64,000 nt of DNA from positions 248,001 through 312,000 of IMG/VR virus record IMGVR_UViG_3300005529_000001. One strand, given 5' to 3'. A program made the position numbers and the translations under genes. Positions 16,509-59,766 of this stretch are shown in pieces. The notes beneath the pieces were generated by a model that made no database searches, was not told the DNA's origin, and was given only the letters and a program-made list of their open reading frames with translations. Every line of letters starts with the position of its first letter. Positions within the stretch are counted from its first letter, which is position 1.

Positions 16509-16832
16509 TCAGGGCAGGAAAACCACCACCGAGACTGAGTCGGTGAGGTTGTGCAGCTGGCTCATCAGCCTGTTGTGCTCCCAAGCGTGCGGCTCTTCGC
16601 TCATGCAACCAAAATAGAGGAGGTTCCTGGCGGGAGTGTCGTGCTTGTCGTTAAAGCTGTCAGCGAAGTTGGCCAACACCAAGCACGTCATGTCATCGTC
16701 GATGCCGAAGCGGACGACCATCCCAGGCTCGACCTCGCCCACTGGGATGCGAGGCTCGCCAACGCCGTTGGCCCCGACGACGTGGAACCTACTCGGCAGC
16801 CCAGCTCTTCCGGACAAAGCCGCTGACGACAT
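16509..16832 (-). CDS. Hypothetical protein (start uncertain)
   Basis: Codirectional ORF filling the gap. Confidence 0.4.
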   Translation of the reverse strand: MSSAALSGRAGLPSRFHVVGANGVGEPRIPVGEVEPGMVVRFGIDDDMTCLVLANFADSFNDKHDTPARNLLYFGCMSEEPHAWEHNRLMSQLHNLTDSVSVVVFLP

Positions 16833-17046
16833 CGACCATCACCTTGGGACCCGTGTTGAGCACCACGCCCGTCCTGGGAACCCCATCATGCTTGTTGACT
16901 TGCAACGAGAAACCCGCGGACTTTGTCACCACAAAGGCCTGCGCCAGCAACATCCCGTTCACTTCTTGTGCAACCCGCATCGCAAGCGCACGTCCGTCGA
17001 GGCGGCTGCCGTTTGGGCGCCTGCGCTCTGTCCTATCGTTCTTCAT
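16789..17046 (-). CDS. Hypothetical protein
   Basis: ATG 17046 with GGAG SD just downstream of the tmRNA. Confidence 0.5.
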   Translation of the reverse strand: MKNDRTERRRPNGSRLDGRALAMRVAQEVNGMLLAQAFVVTKSAGFSLQVNKHDGVPRTGVVLNTGPKVMVDVVSGFVRKSWAAE

Positions 17047-17087
17047 GTGTCCATCTCCGTGCGATGCATCTGATCGCAACTGGGATC

Positions 17088-17457
17088 GGTGGAAGCGCCG
17101 GGAATCGAACCCGGGTCCGCAACTGCTAACCGTCTACGTCTACATGCTTGTCCCTTCTGGGTGTTCATCCTCGGGCGGGACTATCCGGTGGAACTTTTAC
17201 GACCAACACCGTCACGGTCGGCACTACGTTTTACGCCCAGCGCTTTGGCGTTTTTGCATCCAGGTAGCTGGGTGCGCCCCCACGCATTCTGTTGCTAGGC
17301 CGCGTGGTGCCCCAGACGATCAGGCCGCGAGGCGGACGTCGTCAGCGAAGCCGTTGTCGTTGGCGTTCATTCGTCACTGAGGTTTTTAGACCGGACCTTG
17401 GTGCCACCGGTGCATGCAGCAAACAGTCTCACGATCACGTCGAAACCTGTCGCCCCC
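17088..17457 (-). ncRNA. ssrA: tmRNA (transfer-messenger RNA), tag peptide (A)ANDNGFADDVRLAA
   Basis: 5' GGGGGCGACAGGTTTCGAC; 3' T-arm CCGGG-TTCGATT-CCCGG then CGCTTCC-A-CC; acceptor stem with G3.U70; helix 2 pairing GACTGTTTGC/GTAGACGGTT and TGCATG/CATGTA; tag ORF at 17364..17320; 370 nt. Confidence 0.95.
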
Positions 17458-19736: not shown

Positions 19737-21659
19737 TCAGATGATGTTGAGGTCCATGACCGTGACGGTTCCGTAGAAGTCGCTACGAACGACCTTCTTG
19801 CCGTACCGGGTCATGACGCCCTTACGAGGTGTGAAATCCTCAGGGGCGAAGATCGTCGGAGTCACGATGAGGGGGACGTACGGTGAGTACACGTACCCAG
19901 TCTCGAGGTAGCTGCCGCCCTTGTACCCGACGAGGATGCGGTTCCTCGGGAAGTACGGGTCCTTGTAGACCGTGAAGCGGTTGCTCAGGGTGCCGATCGC
20001 CTCTGCACCGATGGTGAAGGGCGAACCGACCTGACCCTCGCCGTCGATCGAGAACTTCGGCTTGTAGAGGACCGAGGCCTCGAGGATGGTGGCGACATCC
20101 GGGCTGGTGACCATGAAGTTGGCCGAGCCGCGGAGCGTCTTGCGGTGGATGGTGTTGGCAACGTCGATGATGGTCTCGACCAGGGTCTCGTACCACTCAC
20201 GAACCGTACCAGTGAACTGCGGACCGATGCTGAGCGAGGTGTTCAGCGTGACCGGTTGGCCCGTCAGCTTGTTGACGAACTTGCCCGGAGCGCGGCTCCA
20301 GTACATGTTGGCGCCGTTGGCCTGGGTCACGAGGTCGTTCAGGATCTCGCGGTCAATCTCGAGAGCGATCTGCTCGCTCAGGATGCTGGTCAGCTCGACC
20401 TCTGCGTCCATCGAGTGGTACGCGTTGAGGTCCTGTGCCAGCTCAGGGCTCCACCGGGCGCGCAGCTTGCGCGTGGTGGCGGTGATTGCGATCGACTCGA
20501 TCTTGATGTCGATCTCTGGGATCGCCGGGGTCGGGTTGACGTTGAAGTCAGACTCGAACGATGGGATCGTCAGCGTTGCACCAGCGGTGCTGTCGACAGT
20601 CAGTGAGTCAGCGATTGCCATCGATGCAACGATCTGGCCGGAACCCGAGAGGACCAGCTGAGGACCAGCACCGTTGACAGCGACTGCGAAGACCAGCTGG
20701 ACCTGTGTGCCGTTGAGCGGAGCAGGCGTGAAGGTCGTGCCGTTGAAGTTACCGCGCTTGTTCAGGCGGCGCAGGTTGAGGACGCCGTTACCTGACTGGT
20801 AAGACTGGCCCCAAGCGAACGTGCCACCGAGACCGGCGCCCGTTGACTGGAAGTTGAAGACCGCGAGCTGCTCGATGGCGAGGAAGTCACCGTTCGGGAT
20901 CGCCGTCGTGATCGCCGAGACGTCAAGGTGACCGAACTGGATCCACTCGGAACCGTTCTGGAGATCAACCTCGAGCTGGGGATCGAAGTTCAGGAAGCGA
21001 GCGTTGGTGCCCGAGAAGTCCGTCGAGGACTTGACGAAGTTACCAACAACGAAGGCTCCGTTGGTGCCGTTGAAGGCTCCGAAGTTCAGCATCGAACCTG
21101 AGACAGAACCGGAGGCGTGCACCTTGGTGTAGCCCACGTTGACCAGGTCGTAGAAACCGCCCGTTGCGAGCGATCCCGACTGGATGCCCTTGCCGGTTGG
21201 GTTGTTGTAGATCGACTGGCCGGAACCGTAGGTCGCTGCGCTTGCACCGCCTGGCTGGTTCAGCTGCAGACCTGACTGGCCACCGACGTTGCTGCCGTAG
21301 GTGTAGTCAAGGTAGAAGATCAGGCCCGAGGGGAGCGACATCGGCTGGATCGAGACGAGCTCGTTGGCGACGAGGCCACCGAAGACACGACGGACGATCG
21401 GGAAGGCGATGTTGGTGAAGCCCTGGATCTGACCCGAGGAAGCAACGTTCGCGCCGCCCGTGGACAGCGAGTTGCCGACTTCCTTCAGGACCTGAGCTGC
21501 CTGGTTCTCCAGGAGCTGGGCCATCGTCTCGCGCTTGTGACCGTCAAGGCCGCGGAGCAAGCCAGTGCGGCTCCACTTCTCGACCAGGCGGGCACGCTCG
21601 GCGCCGACGTGCCGCTCGCGGATGCCAGCGGCTAGTTGTTCCATTGTAAAGAACTTCAT
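19737..21659 (-). CDS. gp23: Major capsid protein (T4 gp23 family)
   Basis: LVEKW..GLL, LLENQ, PIVRRVF..LVANELVSIQPMSLPSGLIFYL, TRKLRARWSPELAQDLNAYH, EIDREI, YSPYVPL, FTPRKGVMTRYG. Confidence 0.97.
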   Translation of the reverse strand: MKFFTMEQLAAGIRERHVGAERARLVEKWSRTGLLRGLDGHKRETMAQLLENQAAQVLKEVGNSLSTGGANVASSGQIQGFTNIAFPIVRRVFGGLVANELVSIQPMSLPSGLIFYLDYTYGSNVGGQSGLQLNQPGGASAATYGSGQSIYNNPTGKGIQSGSLATGGFYDLVNVGYTKVHASGSVSGSMLNFGAFNGTNGAFVVGNFVKSSTDFSGTNARFLNFDPQLEVDLQNGSEWIQFGHLDVSAITTAIPNGDFLAIEQLAVFNFQSTGAGLGGTFAWGQSYQSGNGVLNLRRLNKRGNFNGTTFTPAPLNGTQVQLVFAVAVNGAGPQLVLSGSGQIVASMAIADSLTVDSTAGATLTIPSFESDFNVNPTPAIPEIDIKIESIAITATTRKLRARWSPELAQDLNAYHSMDAEVELTSILSEQIALEIDREILNDLVTQANGANMYWSRAPGKFVNKLTGQPVTLNTSLSIGPQFTGTVREWYETLVETIIDVANTIHRKTLRGSANFMVTSPDVATILEASVLYKPKFSIDGEGQVGSPFTIGAEAIGTLSNRFTVYKDPYFPRNRILVGYKGGSYLETGYVYSPYVPLIVTPTIFAPEDFTPRKGVMTRYGKKVVRSDFYGTVTVMDLNII

Positions 21660-25279: not shown

Positions 25280-25774
25280 TCACCTGTTCTTACGTAGGTC
25301 TCTCAGAGCTAGTTGCCGTTGTAACGGCCCAACCCTGTCCAACATCAAGATACCGTTAAGATGATCGATCTCGTGTTGTACAATCCGTGCAGCCCAATCG
25401 ACAAAAGCTTCTTTGTGAGGTTTGCCCTCAACATCAAGGTACTCCACAACGACCCAAGCATGCCTGGGAACAGCTAATTTGACCCCAGGTAACGACAAAC
25501 AACCTTCATCATCTGTCGTCTTGTCGTGTGATGTATCAATGATTATCGGGTTGATTATTGCACGAAGTTCGTTTCCTTGTGCACCTGCGGTCGGATCCAT
25601 CACCAAGATCTGGATTGTTGAGTTCACTTGGGGTGCCGCGAGTCCCACGCCATCACCAGCGTACATTGCCAGCGTCATCTCCTCAACGAGCTTCGCCAAC
25701 GTAGCATCAAAACGCTCAACGGGAGCGCAGCTCCACTTGAGATCTGAGCTGGGATACTCAACGATGTTTAGCAT
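25280..25774 (-). CDS. def: Peptide deformylase
   Basis: GVGLAAPQV, EGCLS and QHEIDHLNG motifs all present. Confidence 0.95.
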   Translation of the reverse strand: MLNIVEYPSSDLKWSCAPVERFDATLAKLVEEMTLAMYAGDGVGLAAPQVNSTIQILVMDPTAGAQGNELRAIINPIIIDTSHDKTTDDEGCLSLPGVKLAVPRHAWVVVEYLDVEGKPHKEAFVDWAARIVQHEIDHLNGILMLDRVGPLQRQLALRDLRKNR

Positions 25775-26535
25775 CAGCCTGGTCTCTTCTTCCGAGCAGC
25801 CAATCGTTCCTTAACATCAGGCTGCTGCATCGCTGCGCGAGTCCGCTCTTTGATCAGTTGCTTTCGCTCATCTGTCATGTTCGCACGAGCGGTTTGAGAC
25901 TGCTTCTGACGGTACGCTGGATTGGTGTGGGCTGCTTTGATGTTGGCTCGTCCTTCTACGGACTGCAATCCCGCTAGTTGCTTCTCATGGACTTCAGGAC
26001 GTTGCATTGCTTCCATGGTTCGTTCAGAGACCATCTTCCGACGTTCGTCAGATGACATCTGCTCGACAAATTTGGCGTAACGCTCGGACTCGTACATTGC
26101 TTCAGACGTTCGTTTGGAGATCGTCTCGCGTACTTCGGGGCGTGACATTGCTTCACGTTGACGCTGCTTCCATGATGGATCAGCGAGGACCATGCCCTCA
26201 CGGGTGCGCTGAGAGATGAGTTGACGGGTTGCTTCAGACTTAGGACCTGATCCGTTGCCACCCTTCGTCATGTTGTAGCCGTTTGGCTTCTGCGTGTTGA
26301 GTTCCTTGATGTAGTAACGTTCGAAAGACTTAGCCTCCTTGAGTGTTTCAATACCGTCAAGGATCACTTCATGTGTGAACGCGTCAGGACCGTGTTCACG
26401 AATTGCTTTCATGAAGTCTTGCTCACCACCCTTGAAAGCACACGAAACATGTCCATCCCAACGACGTGTCATCGTCTGTTTGGTATAGCCGATATAACGC
26501 ATGTTTTCACGGGTGTGACAGTAGATCAGGTACAT
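25774..26535 (-). CDS. Free-standing GIY-YIG homing endonuclease with helical repeat tail
   Basis: LIY...YIGYT...RW..H, E..YI......PNGYNMTKGG; C-terminal basic helical repeats. Confidence 0.85.
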   Translation of the reverse strand: MYLIYCHTRENMRYIGYTKQTMTRRWDGHVSCAFKGGEQDFMKAIREHGPDAFTHEVILDGIETLKEAKSFERYYIKELNTQKPNGYNMTKGGNGSGPKSEATRQLISQRTREGMVLADPSWKQRQREAMSRPEVRETISKRTSEAMYESERYAKFVEQMSSDERRKMVSERTMEAMQRPEVHEKQLAGLQSVEGRANIKAAHTNPAYRQKQSQTARANMTDERKQLIKERTRAAMQQPDVKERLAARKKRPG

Positions 26536-27652: not shown

Positions 27653-28512
27653 GTTTCCTCCGATGTCAGTTCTGAACTGAGCTTAGTGTACAACATGAAC
27701 CGAGTCACCGTTGCATCGTCTACGCTCTCAAGCGTCTCGCTCATGATGAGCTGTCGAGCTTCCATCAGCTTCTTGCTGACATATTCTGTGTCATTGCTCT
27801 GACGAGCATAGTTGTCGATCTTGACCAACAAGTTGTCACGGATCTCTTCAAGCTTCAAATGAATTGACTTTGGATCGTCATTGGCAGTTGAGAACGAATA
27901 AGCTCGCAGGAGTTGCTTCTGCTCAGAAGAGAGAACGCCAGCGTACTTCTCATTCAGCTTCTTCATCATCAGTTTCATCAACAGACGCCCTGAGCCTGGC
28001 GTTTCGGCTTCCGTCAACTCCGCATCGGTGGGCTGAACCTTTTCGGACACAAGCCACTTGACAACCGCGTCTTCGTACTGAGCTAGCCGGCTTAAGTCAG
28101 CGCCGGGCGTGCGCCAATCGTTGATCAATGTCTGGATAGTTGCGATTATCTTGTACTCGTTGACGTGCGCATCATAGAAGTTCTCGTCATTGAGACCCTT
28201 GTTGATGGCGCCGATCAACAAAGACTTTTCTTTGTCAAGCAGCTTGACATCATGTGCACGAGCTGCGGACTTTGCTTCTTGTAGGATCGATGCAGCAACT
28301 GCCTCGCTCTTGACGGTCGTTTTCACCAATGAATTGATCAGACGATACTCTTTAAAGAGCTCAGAACCGGGCTTGAAGTGCCTGCGGATCAACCTCAAAG
28401 CCGCGTTAGAACGCCTGGAGTCATTACGAACCACCGCTTGTGAGATGCTGAGAACCAGAAACTCATAGAGGAGACCCGTGTTGCGCTTTTTGTTGTGACC
28501 CCTGCCGCTCAT
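27649..28512 (-). CDS. Hypothetical protein between portal and protease
   Basis: HNKKRNTGLLYEFL N-terminus; ATGA-coupled on both sides. Confidence 0.7.
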   Translation of the reverse strand: MSGRGHNKKRNTGLLYEFLVLSISQAVVRNDSRRSNAALRLIRRHFKPGSELFKEYRLINSLVKTTVKSEAVAASILQEAKSAARAHDVKLLDKEKSLLIGAINKGLNDENFYDAHVNEYKIIATIQTLINDWRTPGADLSRLAQYEDAVVKWLVSEKVQPTDAELTEAETPGSGRLLMKLMMKKLNEKYAGVLSSEQKQLLRAYSFSTANDDPKSIHLKLEEIRDNLLVKIDNYARQSNDTEYVSKKLMEARQLIMSETLESVDDATVTRFMLYTKLSSELTSEET

Positions 28513-30650
28513 TCGTCTTCCCCGTCGTCGATGATAAATACATCGCTTTCATGAAGCTGGTGACCGCTCAACGATCCACTCTCAACAAGCTCTACATCAA
28601 CTGATCCGTTATTGCCATCGATCTCATCCTGGACATCGCGACCCTCGGACAGGACCTGGTTTGTGTTGTTCCGGGCTGCTTCCCACGTCTTGGTCATCTT
28701 GCCCAGGATGCTAGCAACATCTGGGGGCAACCCCATCCTGTTACCGGCGCTAATGAACTGAGGCGTTTCGTTCAACGTCTGTTCAATCTGATCTTTGGCC
28801 TCAGCAAACGGGTTTGAGATAACGCTCTTCATCCAATCAGCGTCTGTTGGATCTTCCATGGCATGGTTGTCAATACCCGTCATCTTGACGAAGTCTGGCA
28901 AGTGAGTCTTGCTGGCACCATGAGTCCTACGCCGTGAGCGGTTGTAAAGAGCACGTTGCAGCTGAGACTGTGGCTTGACGGGAGGATCTTTGCTGTTTCC
29001 CGCTACCTTCAATGCAAATGACTCGTTGTCATCACGGTCATCGCCACCCGTCAGGAGCTGATGGCTGGGGTTCTCTTCTTCTTCGGCTTCTTCCCCAGCG
29101 TTTTCTTCAGGCGGCGTTTCTCCGCCGGCTTCTTCTCCACCTGCTTCGCCTCCCTCAGGAGCAGCTCCGCCTCCACCACCTCCCCCAAAGATGTCGTCAG
29201 TGCCTCCGCCAGTGTCTTCACCACCCGCTCCGCCAGCGACTCCCTCGATCGTGTCATCGATTTGTTTCTCCGCCATCCGCTCTTCATCAAGCGCCTCGAC
29301 CTGCTCATCGTTAAGGCCCATGATTTCTTTGCGGATGAATTTCTTGCTGACAACGCCCTCAGGGGCTGAGCCGCCGATCTCGAACTTAGCACGCCACAGC
29401 TCGAGCTTCTGCTGTTGAGCGACCGTTGACGGGTTGCTTAGCCGCAACGTAAAGTTCTGCAAATCCTCGCTGTCATAACCGTGCGCATACAGGTGGATGA
29501 TCGCTAGCTTGTTCAGCTCAGCCATCATTGTCTTTTGGACAACGTTGATTGTCCGGCTGAAGCGGATGTCTTCCTGAGCAAGCGTTGCCTTGCTAGAGAG
29601 CATCTCATCGTATCCCAAGTAGGCTCTGGGGATCTTAAGAGCCGCAAAGAGCTTTTTCTGGATGTACGCTACGTCCTCGACGGCGGCGGTGTTCTGCCCG
29701 CCGGCTAACGTGTCGATCTTGGTTCCCGACTCTCCACCACGGACTGGGATGAAGAAGTCCTCCTCGACCGACATTGGATTGTAACGTAGGTCAACTCGTC
29801 CCGTGTTCCGATCAACGACCGGGGTCGTCCTCATCTGTTGGCGTTGTTGCTCGATGTAGGTGTTGACTTCGTTGGCGGGGATGTTTGCGACATCAATGTA
29901 AAAGACGCGGCGCTCGGGAGCACGAACGACACGGTAAACCAACATCGCGTCCTCGATCAAGATCAACTGGCGCCAGATGCGGCGCGCTGGCTCGATGATC
30001 GAAGAACCATAGGGCAGGAACATGTCGTTGCCCAACAACCGGAAGTGAGTGACTTCCCAGTTTTCAAGCGTTCGGTTACCGAGAGTCACCCACCGGTAAC
30101 GGACAGCGAACGGATCGTCCCTATCATAGTTCTCTTCACGCTCAATCTCGTTGACCGGGATCGGGAAAGCATTGATGACACCGTATTCAGGAGAAACGTC
30201 GTTGTAGAGGAAGAAATCACCATACTTGCAGAGGTTTCGAGCCCACGAACGGAGGTTGAACTCGACGTTCAGGACGTTGTAAAACAAGTCCTCAAGCAGC
30301 TCTTTGATCTTCTCGTTGTCCGAGTAGATGTGAAGGACACGGCCCTTCTCGTCTTGGGCACACGTCTCATCAGCATAGATGTCCATCGCTGCCGCGATCT
30401 CAGGAGTGTACTCCATCTCCTGGAAGTCTTGGTAGCGCATCAAGCGCTCGCTCAGGTTGTACGCATTGGACGTGATCGTCGCGTACGTTGGTGAGAGTGA
30501 CTTCTGGAAGAGGAGGGTACCTGATGACTTTGTCTTGTCAGCGACGGCGATCGTCGTGTCAAGGGCGCGGATCTTTCGCTTGACGACAGGTCCTGAACGG
30601 AACAGCCGGGTCAGCCTGCGAAATAAGCTCTTTGGTTCTCTCCTTGCCAT
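28509..30650 (-). CDS. gp20: Portal protein (T4 gp20 family) with long acidic/Gly-rich C-tail
   Basis: PEIAAAMDIYADE, LIEDAMLVYRVVRAPERRVFYIDV, EEDFFIP.RGG..GTKIDTL.GG, YIQKKLFAALKIP. Confidence 0.95.
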   Translation of the reverse strand: MARREPKSLFRRLTRLFRSGPVVKRKIRALDTTIAVADKTKSSGTLLFQKSLSPTYATITSNAYNLSERLMRYQDFQEMEYTPEIAAAMDIYADETCAQDEKGRVLHIYSDNEKIKELLEDLFYNVLNVEFNLRSWARNLCKYGDFFLYNDVSPEYGVINAFPIPVNEIEREENYDRDDPFAVRYRWVTLGNRTLENWEVTHFRLLGNDMFLPYGSSIIEPARRIWRQLILIEDAMLVYRVVRAPERRVFYIDVANIPANEVNTYIEQQRQQMRTTPVVDRNTGRVDLRYNPMSVEEDFFIPVRGGESGTKIDTLAGGQNTAAVEDVAYIQKKLFAALKIPRAYLGYDEMLSSKATLAQEDIRFSRTINVVQKTMMAELNKLAIIHLYAHGYDSEDLQNFTLRLSNPSTVAQQQKLELWRAKFEIGGSAPEGVVSKKFIRKEIMGLNDEQVEALDEERMAEKQIDDTIEGVAGGAGGEDTGGGTDDIFGGGGGGGAAPEGGEAGGEEAGGETPPEENAGEEAEEEENPSHQLLTGGDDRDDNESFALKVAGNSKDPPVKPQSQLQRALYNRSRRRTHGASKTHLPDFVKMTGIDNHAMEDPTDADWMKSVISNPFAEAKDQIEQTLNETPQFISAGNRMGLPPDVASILGKMTKTWEAARNNTNQVLSEGRDVQDEIDGNNGSVDVELVESGSLSGHQLHESDVFIIDDGEDE

Positions 30651-30705
30651 CTCGTTCACCCCTCCATTCTGTCGGGGCCTCTCTTACCGTATATCACCGG
30701 GAGTA

Positions 30706-31062: not shown

Positions 31063-32709
31063 TCACTTCCTGAGCCAGTCGAAGTCCGAGACAAAACGAC
31101 CGTAGGGACTACGTTGCAATTCTTGTGGGTTTCGTGGCCGCATGACGCTGTACGCGTTGACGCCGGCGATGTTCGGGTCGACAAGCGGTTGGGCTTCGTT
31201 GATGTTCCCGGGCATCTTGTTGATGTCTTTCCTGTCCACGTGGGTGGCAGCTAACATTGCGTATGCCATCTCGCGCGCTTGTTCGCTGACCTGACCACCA
31301 CCTTCGATGAGCCATGTTCCGATCGCCAAGCTCAGGACCAGGTCATCCCACGAGTCCTTTCCCGCAAGAGCTTTGTTCCCTTCCCAGATGAACGACTGGA
31401 GCTGGTCAAACAGGCGTCGCGAATATGACCTCAGTTGCTTGTTCCTGATCAACTCTTCTAGCTTAGCCAAGATCTGTGTTCGGGTCTTCTGGTTTGTGTT
31501 TGGAAACCCAGGTAGCTCGTCCTTAGGATCGATGGGCATGTAGTTGAACGGGTCACCCGTGTGCTTGGGATAGTAGAGCTTTTTGTAGTTGATCTGGTCA
31601 CGTAGTTTCACACAGACCAGGTATCCGAAGGTGTTTTGTTCTGGGATTATGAGGGCATCGCAGTACTTTTTGCCCCACTCCGCTAGCAAGTCTGCCAAGT
31701 GCTCTGGCGGGATCTTACCCATGTACTCAGCACACACCTCATTGTCAACGGTGTCAATGACATGGAACGCTGAGTAGTCATGCGCATCACCACGGCTGAC
31801 GTCCGCGCTCAACACATAACGGTGACCCGCGACAGGCGGGCTCCAAACCCAGACACCGCCCGCAGGCCCCTCTTTCGAGATGGGTGGCATGATCATTTCA
31901 CGCAGGTAATCGAGCTCTTCGGGCTGGAGGAATGTGTCACCTGATGCAATGAAGTCACACATGAACTCTTGCGCAATCTGACGCTTGTTCATGCCCTTTG
32001 ATTCGTTCTTGAACCATGCTTCATCGTGTTCAGGATGGACGGTCCAGTGAAGCCGGATGGGGTTGAAGCCGTTGAGTCCCGCTTCGGCTTCCGTCCACAA
32101 ACGGTAATACTGCCCGCCGACGCCCTTGGGAGTCGATAGCACGATCGCCTTGCCACCCGTCGAGATCGTTGGTTTCAGACCCGTCCAGATCTCTTCAAAA
32201 TCACGAATGATAGCAGCTTCATCAACTATCAGAAGCGACAATGCTTCTGATCGGCCCGCATCTTCAGATGTTGGGATGGCAACAACCTGCGAGCCGTTGT
32301 CAAAAGTAATGGCTTGCTTGGTGGGCTCAAACTTGGGCAGCAACAACCACTTGGGCAAATTGTCAAGGATGACCTTGCACTTTTTGATCATGTTCATCGC
32401 GGTGGGAAGCTTGGTCGCGATGATGAGGATGTTCTGGTCCTTGTAAAAGATGGCGAGCCACGTTGCGTACGCTGCACATAACGTAGACAGACCCAGCTGT
32501 CTTGACTTCAAGATGATGTTAAGACGGTGTTCTATGAACTGCCTGACGCAGTCATCCTGAAACGGGTACGTTTCAAATGGGAGCAAGCCTCGAGCGGGGT
32601 GCTGGATCTTGCAATACTTCTTCATGAAGTAGACAGGATCCTTGCCACACTTGATTATCTCCTCGATCTGCTCCTGCTTTGACAGGGGTTTTGGAGCAGC
32701 TTTCGTCAT
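31063..32709 (-). CDS. gp17: Terminase large subunit (T4 gp17 family)
   Basis: KC.KDPVYF, LKSRQLGLST (Walker A), LLIVDEAA (Walker B), STPKG, QEF.C.F, ADVSRG..DYS, DDLV. Confidence 0.95.
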   Translation of the reverse strand: MTKAAPKPLSKQEQIEEIIKCGKDPVYFMKKYCKIQHPARGLLPFETYPFQDDCVRQFIEHRLNIILKSRQLGLSTLCAAYATWLAIFYKDQNILIIATKLPTAMNMIKKCKVILDNLPKWLLLPKFEPTKQAITFDNGSQVVAIPTSEDAGRSEALSLLIVDEAAIIRDFEEIWTGLKPTISTGGKAIVLSTPKGVGGQYYRLWTEAEAGLNGFNPIRLHWTVHPEHDEAWFKNESKGMNKRQIAQEFMCDFIASGDTFLQPEELDYLREMIMPPISKEGPAGGVWVWSPPVAGHRYVLSADVSRGDAHDYSAFHVIDTVDNEVCAEYMGKIPPEHLADLLAEWGKKYCDALIIPEQNTFGYLVCVKLRDQINYKKLYYPKHTGDPFNYMPIDPKDELPGFPNTNQKTRTQILAKLEELIRNKQLRSYSRRLFDQLQSFIWEGNKALAGKDSWDDLVLSLAIGTWLIEGGGQVSEQAREMAYAMLAATHVDRKDINKMPGNINEAQPLVDPNIAGVNAYSVMRPRNPQELQRSPYGRFVSDFDWLRK

Positions 32710-54797: not shown

Positions 54798-56174
54798 TCA
54801 GAGGATCTTAGACGCAAGAGTGGCAAGCTCCGATCTCTCGCCCTTGATGAGGGTGACATGGCCGGCGATAGGGTAATCTTTGAACCGCTCGACGGCGTAA
54901 GTCAACCCGTTAGTGAAAACATCCACATGAACGTTGTCAATCTGCTCAATATCACCCGTCAAGATGATTTTGGTGCCATCTCCCACACGAGTAATGATCG
55001 TCTTCAGCTCGTGCATCGACAGGTTCTGGGCTTCGTCGATGACAATGAAGGCGTTCGGGATCGACCTTCCCCTGATGAAAGTGATCGCTTCAATCTCAAT
55101 GAGACCACGCTCCTGCATCAGGTTCAGGTACATGTTATCGTCAAACGCTTGCTTTTCGTTGCCTGCACGCCGCTGTCTCTTGGGACGGTTCCTCTTGGTG
55201 TCCATCAGGAAGTTGAGGTTGTCACGGACGGGAGCGATCCACGGTTCCATCTTCTCCTCAAGGGTCCCTGGCAAAAAGCCAATGTCCTTACCAACGGGCT
55301 GGACTGGACGGGTGACGATCAGCTTGTCATACCGTGCAACAGCTGGGTTTCCTAACGTCTTCAGTTGCTCGAGACCTGCCGCAAGCGCGAGCAGCGTCTT
55401 GCCCGTGCCAGACGGGCCCACCAGCGTCAACAGCTTGATCTTTTCATCAAACAACAAATCAAGCGAGAACTGCTGTTCTTTGTTCCTGGGAGTCAAGCCA
55501 AACGCTTGTTCGATTTTCTCGACGGGAACAAGTGGCTTCTTGGGATCAATGCACTTCGCCAGGGCTGACTTGGTAGGTCGGCCATCGTCAAAAGCGTGCT
55601 TGATGACAACGATCTGGTTTGGGTACAGCTGATGATTACTTGTCAGGTCAAGCTCACCATGCTTGTAGAAGTGATCAATTCGTTCTTCTTCGAGCTCAAT
55701 CACTTCAACGCCACGGTAAAATTTCTGCGGGCTGTCAACAGCCACACGCATCTTTTTGTAGTCTTCACACTTGACACCGATGCTGTCACACTTGATCCTG
55801 ACGTTGATGTCCTTTGACACCAAGATAGAACCATCGACGTGTTTGGCATAAGCGATGATCATGTTGTCAGGCTTGCCCAGTTCTAGCCCAGGCAACTGGA
55901 CGTCTTTGATGGCGTCCATTCGCCCTACCTTTAGGGTCCCACCCTCGTGCAGCTGGACACCTGCGTAGAGACCGCCTCGTTCTCGAAGAGTGTCGAGCGA
56001 TCGGGTCACTTGACGCGCATTACGTCCGACTTCATCGGGTCGGCTCTTGTGACGATCTAGCTCTTCTAAGACAATCATCGGGATGATGACGTCATTTTCT
56101 TCAAATGAAAAGATCGAGTTCGGATCGCTTAGAAGGACGTTGGTATCAAGGACGTACGTCTTCTTCTGGCTCAT
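54798..56174 (-). CDS. phoH: PIN-domain PhoH-family ATPase
   Basis: VLDTNVLL, ELD, D..I, SKDINVR (PIN); GPSGTGKT, IGFLPG..EKMEPW, RGRSI, DEAQN, TRVG...LTGD..QID (PhoH). Confidence 0.92.
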   Translation of the reverse strand: MSQKKTYVLDTNVLLSDPNSIFSFEENDVIIPMIVLEELDRHKSRPDEVGRNARQVTRSLDTLRERGGLYAGVQLHEGGTLKVGRMDAIKDVQLPGLELGKPDNMIIAYAKHVDGSILVSKDINVRIKCDSIGVKCEDYKKMRVAVDSPQKFYRGVEVIELEEERIDHFYKHGELDLTSNHQLYPNQIVVIKHAFDDGRPTKSALAKCIDPKKPLVPVEKIEQAFGLTPRNKEQQFSLDLLFDEKIKLLTLVGPSGTGKTLLALAAGLEQLKTLGNPAVARYDKLIVTRPVQPVGKDIGFLPGTLEEKMEPWIAPVRDNLNFLMDTKRNRPKRQRRAGNEKQAFDDNMYLNLMQERGLIEIEAITFIRGRSIPNAFIVIDEAQNLSMHELKTIITRVGDGTKIILTGDIEQIDNVHVDVFTNGLTYAVERFKDYPIAGHVTLIKGERSELATLASKIL

Positions 56175-56286
56175 GAGATTTATTGTTCTTTCTGTTGGTG
56201 CGTTGTGCACTGTTGGTTCTTTCCCTTTGGTTTCTTGAACATAGAAAGGGCCAACCATTACATTCTAATCATCTGGTGGGTTATCC

Positions 56287-59160: not shown

Positions 59161-59766
59161 TCAGGCACCGATGATCTTGTCAACAATGCCTAGCTTGATC
59201 GCGTCTTCGGGTGTCAAAAAGTAGTCAAGCATCGGGCGCATAAAGTCCTTCTCTACTTTCTCCTTTGACATCTTTGTCTCTTTCACGAGAGCGCTGACCA
59301 TCAGCTCCTGGAGCCGGCGCGCTTCTTTTGTCTCGTTTTCCATCTCAAAGATGTTTCCCATGACGCCTCCTGAGATCGGGTGGATCATGATGCGTGCAGA
59401 TGCACCGATCAACCGCTTGCCCTTGACTCCAGATGCCAGCAAGAGCACGCCTGCCGACATCACCTTTCCCAAACCCACCGTGTGAACGGGACACGGCAAA
59501 AACTTGAGGATGTCATAGAGAGAAAACATCTCGTCAACGCTGCCACCGTAGGTTGACACAACAAGATAGATCGGGTTCCGATTCAGGTTAGCGAGGTGTA
59601 GTAATTGCGCGATAACATTCGCAATCGAGTGTTCGCTGACCTCGCTATGCAAGTACACGATCCGAGTGTTGTCTACTTGCGACGCTAGAGCACGAGTGAG
59701 ATGCTCGATCTGATCTTCTTCTTCCGCAGTGACACGGTTCCGGTTTTCAAGCGTCGCTCGACCCAT
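59161..59766 (-). CDS. clpP: ClpP-like protease proteolytic subunit
   Basis: RIVYL, STYGGSV, VHTVGLG.VMSAG (Ser), IMIH (His), D.FLTPEDAIKLGIVDKI (Asp). Confidence 0.9.
   Translation of the reverse strand: MGRATLENRNRVTAEEEDQIEHLTRALASQVDNTRIVYLHSEVSEHSIANVIAQLLHLANLNRNPIYLVVSTYGGSVDEMFSLYDILKFLPCPVHTVGLGKVMSAGVLLLASGVKGKRLIGASARIMIHPISGGVMGNIFEMENETKEARRLQELMVSALVKETKMSKEKVEKDFMRPMLDYFLTPEDAIKLGIVDKIIGA

What the first reader, a model, noticed from the sequence alone, without database searches (positions are those of the whole stretch)
17088..17457. Complete phage-encoded tmRNA with its own tag peptide
Seen: one-piece tmRNA with alanine identity (G3.U70), a T-arm, helix 2 pairing and tag ANDNGFADDVRLAA. 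It is embedded among phage genes on both sides. Only ACC is encoded at the 3' end (next base G), so CCA must be completed by an enzyme. No smpB is in the window. Known: some large phages carry tmRNA. Inference: it sustains ribosome rescue when host mRNA or tmRNA is cleaved by defence RNases or by the phage PIN-PhoH. The altered tag middle (GFADDVR) may change adaptor or protease routing. The tag sequence may also help identify the host.
Basis: partly seen in the sequence, partly recalled or inferred. Interest (0 to 1): 0.65.

Follow-up and report, generated by a model that had tools for sequence, protein, structure and literature searches.

The report
Jumbo-phage tmRNA with lineage-specific tag
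A complete ribosome-rescue RNA (tmRNA) sits among the head genes of a 369-kb soil-type jumbo phage and has been inherited across a whole clade of related phages with its own lengthened degradation tag; phage tmRNAs are already known, so this is a well-documented new example rather than a new kind of thing.

Summary
The window lies in a complete 369,475-bp phage genome with terminal repeats. The gene sits in the head module, 2.3 kb downstream of a gp23-type capsid gene. Homologous tmRNAs occur in 21 related metagenomic phage loci and in one 278-kb relative. They are 47-79% identical to the window's copy, and compensatory changes support helix 2, both PK1 stems, stems in PK2-PK4 and the T-arm, so the RNA is under selection. 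Phage tags all start ANDN, run 13-15 residues (bacterial ANDN tags: 9-11), usually have Gly at position 5, and end in a ClpX-type degron. The genome has no SmpB, AlaRS or SspB. It does encode a CCA-adding-type enzyme, a ClpP, a PIN-PhoH2 and a truncated RF1-like protein. The nearest bacterial tmRNAs are from Myxococcota, which hints at the host but does not prove it. One caveat: the window's copy has G, not A, at the frame-setting -4 position. Verdict: a new member of a known kind. Function in infection is inferred, not shown.

The parts
17087..17457 (-). One-piece tmRNA gene. The mature RNA probably spans 17088-17457; base 17087 (G) stands where the final A of CCA would be.
   Evidence: ARAGORN. 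Rfam RF00023, 87 bits vs 47. The only tmRNA in the 369-kb genome.
17451..17457 (-). 5' strand of the acceptor stem (GGGGGCG), with G3 of the G3.U70 alanine identity pair.
   Evidence: Sequence. Compensatory changes in relatives, e.g. GGGGAUG/CAUCUCC and GCGCUGG/CCAGUGC.
17088..17114 (-). T-arm (17098-17114), 3' acceptor strand (17091-17097), discriminator A (17090) and CC (17088-17089).
   Evidence: T-arm 97% paired with 5 pairs showing double changes; 0 of 500 shuffles reach this.
17375..17411 (-). Pseudoknot PK1, both stems.
   Evidence: S1 97% paired and S2 81% paired across 21 sequences. All slid controls are below 54%, and 0 of 500 shuffles reach the observed values.
17320..17364 (-). Tag reading frame: resume codon GCC, 14 codons, stop UGA at 17320-17322.
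   Evidence: ARAGORN. Frame 0 gives a 13-15-residue tag in all 22 clade members, whereas the +1 frame gives products of 8 to 56 residues with no consistent C-terminus.
17365..17371 (-). Seven bases upstream of the resume codon, with G at -4 and A at -3.
   Evidence: A at -4 in 75 of 75 sampled bacterial tmRNAs and in 19 of 22 phage copies. Role of the E. coli equivalent, A86: PMC2481249.
17489..17494 (-). TTGACA box about 32-37 nt before the mature 5' end; a possible -35 element.
   Evidence: Conserved at this distance in at least 12 relatives. No sigma-70 site was called, and TTGACA is 3.6-fold over-represented genome-wide, so this is inference only.
16789..17046 (-). Conserved 85-aa basic ORF starting 41 nt after the tmRNA, with a CI-2/eglin-like predicted fold. 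Context only; no functional link is shown.
   Evidence: Orthologues follow the tmRNA in 12 relatives. No Pfam, PHROG or PDB sequence match. AF2 pLDDT 81.7. Potato-inhibitor-I family members top both fold searches, Z 5.2-6.8 against 3.4 for the next fold.
19737..21659 (-). gp23-type major capsid protein, the synteny anchor 2.3 kb upstream.
   Evidence: Pfam Gp23 263 bits, PHROG major head protein. More than 599 relatives in IMG/VR.
54798..56258 (-). PIN_4 + PhoH (PhoH2-type RNA helicase/nuclease). Context only.
59161..59766 (-). ClpP-family protease, closer to cellular ClpP models than to head-maturation models. Context only.
   Evidence: PF00574 145 bits. NCBIfam ClpP subfamily 138 bits against 48 for the head-maturation model. 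No ClpX-like neighbour.

Best explanation
This is a functional, phage-encoded one-piece tmRNA (ssrA) that has been inherited within a large clade of gp23-type jumbo phages. The steps below are inferred from established knowledge of trans-translation, not shown here. The RNA is transcribed in the head-gene region. Its 3' end is completed to CCA by the phage's own or the host's CCA-adding enzyme. Host AlaRS charges it with alanine through G3.U70. It binds host SmpB and EF-Tu, because the phage has neither SmpB nor AlaRS. It then enters ribosomes stalled on broken or stop-less mRNAs, and translation resumes on its short frame, adding a 14-residue tag that ends in Leu-Ala-Ala. That tag marks the peptide for ClpXP-type proteolysis and frees the ribosome. 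The likely benefit is extra ribosome-recycling capacity, and amino-acid salvage, while the phage runs a large translation load with its own 57 tRNAs and while mRNA is being cut by phage or host nucleases. The lineage-specific longer tag probably tunes how tagged peptides are handed to proteases.
For: Shown:
- Full-length matches by two independent detectors.
- Location inside a complete phage genome, among head genes.
- Homologues in 21 related loci and in one 278-kb relative. All 17 relatives tested pass Rfam's cut-off at 49-125 bits.
- Sequence identity is only 47-79%, yet 37 of 50 predicted pairs keep pairing through double changes.
- Helix 2, PK1 S1 and S2, a PK2 stem and the T-arm each beat all 500 shuffles and all slid controls. 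Further covarying stems lie in PK3 and PK4.
- 20 of the 21 relatives' copies, together with the window's, form one clade, on a long branch, in the tmRNA tree. On the capsid tree, every locus of the window's clade with enough flank has the tmRNA, except one.
- Frame 0 alone yields a tag in all 22 copies. 16 of 22 end LAA or IAA; the rest end LVA, HAA, TAA or NAA.
- Absent from the genome: SmpB, AlaRS, SspB. Present: a CCA-adding-type enzyme, ClpP and PIN-PhoH2.
- Phage tmRNAs are documented in the literature.
Against: The window copy has G at the -4 frame-setting position, where all 75 sampled bacterial tmRNAs have A; the E. coli A86G mutant is strongly impaired. No clear promoter or terminator was found for the window copy. 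Dependence on host SmpB is assumed, not tested. The host is unknown.
Confidence: 0.8

Rival explanations
1. It is a bacterial ssrA gene: host DNA on a chimeric or mis-binned contig, or the attachment-site remnant of a prophage.
For: ssrA is a classic prophage integration site (own knowledge; also stated in PMC9004378). The RNA has all the bacterial features.
Against: The record is a complete 369-kb phage genome with terminal repeats. The gene is full length and flanked by head genes on the same strand. The same arrangement recurs in 21 independent metagenomic loci. Phage copies form their own clade and are at most 52% identical to any sampled bacterial tmRNA.
Confidence: 0.02
2. The clade's tmRNA is functional, but the window's own copy is impaired or resumes in another frame because of the G at -4 and A at -3. 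It would then rescue ribosomes poorly, or add a different +1-frame peptide of 22 residues that happens to end Ala-Ala.
For: A at -4 in 75 of 75 bacterial and 19 of 22 phage copies. In E. coli, A86 acts as a ruler four bases before the resume codon, A86G is strongly impaired, and A86C shifts resumption to +1. The +1 product of the window copy ends in Ala-Ala.
Against: The same G(-4)A(-3) state occurs in two other lineages of the clade (L023/L031 and L013) that keep intact frame-0 tags, so it seems tolerated. The frame-0 tag region is base-for-base identical to that of L011, which has A at -4. In the relatives, +1 products are of erratic length and have no degron. A86G keeps some activity in E. 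coli.
Confidence: 0.12
3. The RNA works mainly as a takeover tool rather than as extra rescue capacity. It competes with host tmRNA for host SmpB and replaces the host tag with a phage-specific one, which redirects or delays the destruction of tagged proteins, perhaps together with the phage ClpP and the CI-2-like protein encoded next to it.
For: No phage SmpB, so the RNA must share the host's. Tags are 3-5 residues longer than bacterial ANDN tags, with Gly at position 5 in 16 of 22 phage tags against 0 of 68 bacterial ones. The phage has its own ClpP. In one relative a Clp-family gene directly follows the tmRNA. A conserved neighbour has a protease-inhibitor-like fold.
Against: All links are by co-occurrence only. 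ClpP lies 42 kb from the tmRNA in this genome. The fold matches are of middling strength (Z below 7), and a shared fold does not show function. Tag ends remain ordinary ClpX-type degrons.
Confidence: 0.15

Closest known systems
Bacterial one-piece tmRNA (SsrA, Rfam RF00023), e.g. E. coli
   Same: tRNA-like domain with G3.U70, a canonical T-loop, the long helix 2, PK1 before the resume codon, a short frame starting with Ala and ending Leu-Ala-Ala, three further pseudoknot regions, and a total length of about 370 nt.
   Different: It is carried by a phage, with no SmpB gene in the genome. The tag is 14 residues rather than about 10. It has G instead of A at -4. The final A of CCA is not encoded.
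tmRNAs of Myxococcota (Polyangiaceae-type MAGs; 10-residue ANDN tags)
   Same: They are the best full-length matches to the phage-clade profile, at 60-86 bits. With the 5'-half covariance model, about 56 of 151 genomes reach E<=1e-12 (best 74 bits). The other phyla give 20 (Gemmatimonadota), 7, 6, 5, 2 and 0 (Bacteroidota). They share the ANDN start and the A-L-A-A-type end.
   Different: At most about 52% identical. Phage copies form a separate long branch, apart from L054, which sits beside a Myxococcales tmRNA. Bacterial tags are 3-5 residues shorter and lack Gly at position 5.
tmRNAs reported in other phages: huge phages (PMC7162821), phage G (PMC12484599), Melnitz-like pelagiphages (PMC9004378)
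   Same: A complete ssrA in a large lytic-type phage genome that also holds many tRNAs and translation-related genes. About 2.3% of isolate phage genomes carry one.
   Different: No sequence match in the INPHARED phage collection, and the nearest capsid relatives are at most 50% identical. It is one-piece, unlike Melnitz. No SmpB accompanies it, unlike some huge phages. Clade-wide inheritance with a lineage-specific tag is documented here.
Unannotated tmRNA of Myxococcus phage Mx1 (OR576727), found here
   Same: A phage of about 55% GC with many tRNAs and a full-length tmRNA, Rfam 117.7 bits.
   Different: Its head genes are unrelated to this phage, and the two tmRNAs share only the tRNA-like core. 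Mx1 therefore does not support the host inference.

Membership tests
tmRNA (Rfam RF00023) | Covariance-model score above the curated gathering threshold over the full model | tested here: met
   87 bits vs 47, model positions 1-374. 17 relatives score 49-125 bits.
tmRNA (Rfam RF00023) | tRNA-like domain: 5' and 3' ends pair as an acceptor stem with G3.U70, plus a T-arm with a T-loop | tested here: met
   Sequence. Acceptor and T-arm pairs are kept through compensatory changes.
tmRNA (Rfam RF00023) | Long helix 2 joining the tRNA-like domain to the pseudoknot ring | tested here: met
   Four segments, 74-97% paired, 17 pairs with double changes, 0 of 500 shuffles reach the observed values.
tmRNA (Rfam RF00023) | Pseudoknot PK1 just upstream of the resume codon | tested here: met
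   Both stems covary.
tmRNA (Rfam RF00023) | Pseudoknots PK2-PK4 downstream of the tag frame | tested here: inconclusive
   One covarying stem was found in each of PK2, PK3 and PK4, and a second PK4 stem is visible by eye. Indels in the alignment prevented a full column-wise test of every stem.
tmRNA (Rfam RF00023) | Start-codon-less short frame beginning with Ala and ending in a hydrophobic Ala-Ala degron plus a stop | tested here: met
tmRNA (Rfam RF00023) | Conserved A four bases before the resume codon (E. coli A86) | tested here: not met
   G in the window copy; A in 19 of 22 clade members and in 75 of 75 bacterial copies. This is a functional determinant, not a criterion of the Rfam family.
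tmRNA (Rfam RF00023) | Works with SmpB, is charged by AlaRS, and tags stalled peptides | not testable with these tools
   No SmpB or AlaRS in the phage genome, so host factors are required. No RNA data could be obtained.
Phage-encoded tmRNA | The gene lies within a bona fide phage genome, not in flanking host DNA | tested here: met
   Complete genome with terminal repeats, head genes on both sides, and synteny in 21 related loci.
SmpB (considered for the conserved 85-aa neighbour) | SmpB sequence family or SmpB-like fold | tested here: not met
   No Pfam match. The predicted fold matches the CI-2/eglin family instead.

The most novel reading that the evidence does not exclude
This phage lineage has evolved a private trans-translation system. 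Its lengthened, Gly5-bearing tag, written by a phage tmRNA that borrows host SmpB, would be read by phage-controlled proteolysis (its own ClpP, and a CI-2-like putative protease inhibitor encoded directly after the tmRNA). The phage, not the host, would then decide the fate of peptides from stalled ribosomes. In the window's copy, the G at -4 might even shift or split the resume frame.
Probability: 0.1. Interest if true: 0.65.

Novelty: new member of a known kind. Interest (0 to 1): 0.35.

Why it matters
Phage tmRNAs have mostly been listed in genome surveys. Nobody has shown what they do, or whether they are more than recent pick-ups from hosts. Here, one tmRNA has persisted through long divergence of a widespread clade of environmental jumbo phages. 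Structural covariation shows selection on it, and its tag differs systematically from every sampled bacterial tag. That makes the clade a good natural series for three tests: whether phage tmRNAs really act in ribosome rescue, whether tag length and sequence change protease hand-off, and how strictly the -4 adenine rule holds. The tmRNA also gives a testable host lead (Myxococcota) for a phage group with no cultured member.

Tried and rejected
- blastn of the tmRNA against 50,697 phage records found no match.
Both were corrected by obtaining handles first.
- The sigma-70 promoter scan found nothing on the tmRNA strand.
- A GTGG-TAGATA motif is conserved upstream of the tmRNA in relatives but occurs only twice in the genome, so it is not a general phage promoter.
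- The conserved TTGACA box is weakened as evidence by a 3.6-fold genome-wide excess of that hexamer.
- The downstream hairpin is significant in 5 of 12 relatives but not in the window.
- Myxococcus phage Mx1 was tested as a possible relative. Its head genes show no similarity, so it gives no support for the host inference.
- The conserved 85-aa neighbour was tested as a possible SmpB substitute and rejected on fold.
- Stop-codon recoding was considered because of the tRNA with anticodon CUA. Reading TAG through does not lengthen the longest frames, so it was rejected.
The tags were then derived from the stored alignments.
Only ClpP's neighbours were scanned.

Full report
**What is there.** Rfam's tmRNA model (RF00023) matches 17087-17457 end to end at 87 bits, against a curated threshold of 47. 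Several features can be read directly from the sequence:
- The two ends pair as a 7-bp acceptor stem with G3.U70, and also G4.U69.
- The T-loop is canonical.
- The resume codon is GCC and the stop is UGA.
- After the acceptor stem come A, C, C and then G, so the last base of CCA is not encoded.

The only omission was the strand.

**Where it is.** The window is bases 248001-312000 of a 369,475-bp virus record that is rated complete. The record ends in an exact 110-bp direct repeat and has 55.9% GC. The tmRNA lies in a roughly 500-bp gap between minus-strand genes inside the head and packaging module:
- On one side are the large terminase (31063-32709), the portal (28509-30659) and a gp23-type capsid protein (19737-21659).
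- On the other side are virion structural proteins.

The genome holds 57 predicted tRNAs plus this one tmRNA. No cultured phage is close. The capsid protein is at most 50% identical to an uncultured 484-kb phage, and 34-42% identical to Flavobacterium and Microcystis T4-like phages.

**It is an inherited, selected gene.** The capsid protein has more than 599 relatives in IMG/VR.
- In the 80 best loci, ARAGORN found a tmRNA 2-5 kb downstream of the capsid gene in 16.
- A profile built from these found five more.
- A 278-kb relative that lacks the tmRNA at that position has a homologous copy elsewhere in its genome.
- All 17 relatives tested pass Rfam's threshold.

The copies are only 47-79% identical to the window's, yet pairing is maintained.
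- 37 of the 50 pairs predicted by RNAalifold show double compensatory changes.
- In my own count with controls, the four helix 2 segments, both PK1 stems, a PK2 stem and the T-arm are 74-97% paired. Slid partners give far less (at most 72%, mostly under 55%), and none of 500 shuffles reaches the observed value.
- Further covarying stems lie in the PK3 and PK4 regions.
- In the tmRNA tree, 20 of the 21 relatives' copies, together with the window's, form one clade on a long branch.
- On the capsid tree, every member of the window's clade with enough flanking sequence carries the gene, with one exception.

This rules out host contamination, an attachment-site remnant, and a decaying pseudogene at the level of the clade.

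**The tag.** All 22 phage tags begin ANDN. Their length is 13-15 residues (median 13), whereas 68 bacterial one-piece tmRNAs with ANDN tags have a median of 10. Position 5 is Gly in 16 of 22 phage tags and in none of the 68 bacterial ones. The C-termini stay degron-like, with LAA in 14 of 22. Only frame 0 gives a coherent product across the clade. What it does is not known.

**Partners.** Six-frame searches of the whole genome gave these results:

| Factor | Result |
|---|---|
| SmpB | not found |
| AlaRS | not found |
| SspB | not found |
| CCA-adding-type class-II nucleotidyltransferase | present (391 aa; best NCBIfam match, CCA tRNA nucleotidyltransferase, 186 bits, below that model's 290-bit cut-off; Pfam PolyA_pol 115 bits vs 23) |
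| ClpP, closer to cellular ClpP models than to head-maturation models | present (window 59161-59766) |
| PIN-PhoH2 RNA helicase/nuclease | present (window 54798-56258) |
| 196-aa RF1-like protein holding only the C-terminal part of a release factor | present |

SmpB was also not found in five tmRNA-bearing relatives' contigs, though those contigs are fragments. Many of the phage's tRNAs lack an encoded CCA, which explains why the phage carries the nucleotidyltransferase and fits the tmRNA's incomplete end. Across the clade the 3' end varies from a full CCA to a single C.

**Host lead.** A genome-collection scan linked the D-loop motif to an ANDN start. It returned tmRNAs from Myxococcota, Gemmatimonadota, Acidobacteriota, several Pseudomonadota and others. 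Against the phage profile, the best full-length matches were all Polyangiaceae-type Myxococcota MAGs, at 60-86 bits.

I therefore built a covariance model of the phage 5' half and scored 151 genomes per phylum:

| Phylum | Genomes at E<=1e-12 | Best bits |
|---|---|---|
| Myxococcota | about 56 | 74 |
| Gemmatimonadota | 20 | 62 |
| Bdellovibrionota | 7 | 55 |
| Pseudomonadota | 6 | 52 |
| Verrucomicrobiota | 5 | 51 |
| Acidobacteriota | 2 | 52 |
| Bacteroidota | 0 | - |

 Identity to any sampled bacterial tmRNA is still only about 50%, so this is a lead on the ancestral donor or host, not proof. Myxococcus phage Mx1 is similar in GC content and tRNA load but is not related to this phage. Mx1 does carry an unannotated tmRNA of its own.

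**A caveat specific to this copy.** Four bases before the resume codon, the window has G followed by A. All 75 sampled bacterial tmRNAs and 19 of 22 clade members have A at -4. In E. coli this adenine (A86) acts as the ruler that sets the frame. A86G is strongly impaired, and A86C shifts resumption to +1 (PMC2481249). Two other lineages of the clade share the G-A state with intact tags, so it may be tolerated. Whether the window copy resumes correctly is open.

**Expression signals.** No sigma-70-type promoter was called on the tmRNA strand. A TTGACA box sits at a conserved distance upstream in many relatives, but that hexamer is common throughout the genome. A hairpin follows the 3' end in many relatives; it is significant in 5 of 12 but not in the window.

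**Mechanism and standing.** The most likely mechanism is ordinary trans-translation using host SmpB, AlaRS and EF-Tu. The phage would supply the RNA and possibly the CCA repair. This would give extra ribosome recycling during a translation-heavy infection in which mRNAs are being cut. The identity of the RNA and the selection on it are shown; the steps of the mechanism are inferred from what is known of bacterial tmRNA.

Phage tmRNAs are already on record in huge phages (PMC7162821), in about 2.3% of isolate phage genomes (PMC9004378) and in phage G (PMC12484599). This is therefore a new member of a known kind. Its interest lies in the clade-wide inheritance, the lineage-specific tag, the missing SmpB and the -4 deviation.

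Noticed in passing
window 16789-17046 (-); orthologues in L010, L011, L013, L015, L016, L020, L023, L033, L035, L036, L044, L047: A conserved 85-aa basic protein is encoded directly after the tmRNA. It has no family match. The AF2 model (pLDDT 81.7) resembles potato-inhibitor-I serine-protease inhibitors such as CI-2 and eglin c (Z 5.2-6.8, next fold 3.4). A possible phage protease inhibitor; the function is untested.
   Followed up: partly
genome 36781-36856 (tRNA with anticodon CUA), genome 336639-336792 (two tRNA-like genes with a four-base 'ttca' anticodon call), genome 8929-9519 (196-aa RF1-like ORF); all outside the window: The phage carries an amber-suppressor-type tRNA, two odd tRNAs and a truncated release-factor-1-like protein (end of the PCRF domain plus the GGQ domain). 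Yet there is no sign of TAG recoding: TAG ends 94 of 530 long frames, and reading it through does not lengthen the longest ORFs.
   Followed up: partly
L024:15611-15977, L027:15235-15608, L087:12032-12410, L213:1501-1876, L047:14354-14731: A sub-clade of the phage tmRNAs has a non-canonical T-loop (GCAGUA-type) together with a changed D-loop (UAG or AAG instead of AGG). This looks like tertiary D-loop/T-loop co-variation. ARAGORN misses these copies, and Rfam scores them 49-80 bits.
   Followed up: no
L226:46646-47023 (Myxococcus phage Mx1, OR576727): Mx1 has a full-length tmRNA (Rfam 117.7 bits) inside its tRNA cluster. The record does not annotate it, and a small CDS annotated there overlaps it. 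It is unrelated to this clade beyond the tRNA-like core.
   Followed up: partly
L029:7467-8222, L024 (240-aa ORF after the tmRNA), L067 (261-aa ORF); window 25774-26535 (-): A GIY-YIG homing endonuclease (Pfam/PHROG match) sits immediately downstream of the tmRNA in L029. L024 has a sequence-similar 240-aa ORF at the same spot that was not scanned, and L067 has an unclassified 261-aa ORF there. The window has its own GIY-YIG gene in the head module.
   Followed up: no
L213:1905-2507 (278-kb relative G001): In this relative the tmRNA lies about 60-75 kb from the capsid gene, and the very next gene is a Clp-protease-family protein (PF00574, 95 bits).
   Followed up: no
window 59161-59766 (-) and 54798-56258 (-): A phage ClpP closer to cellular ClpP than to head-maturation proteases, with no ClpX-like neighbour, and a PIN-PhoH2 RNA helicase/nuclease. 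Both lie in the same window as the tmRNA but about 37-42 kb away.
   Followed up: partly
whole genome: The hexamer TTGACA occurs 500 times against about 139 expected from shuffling, on both strands. CTTGACAA is about 9-fold enriched. The cause (coding bias or a signal) is unknown.
   Followed up: no
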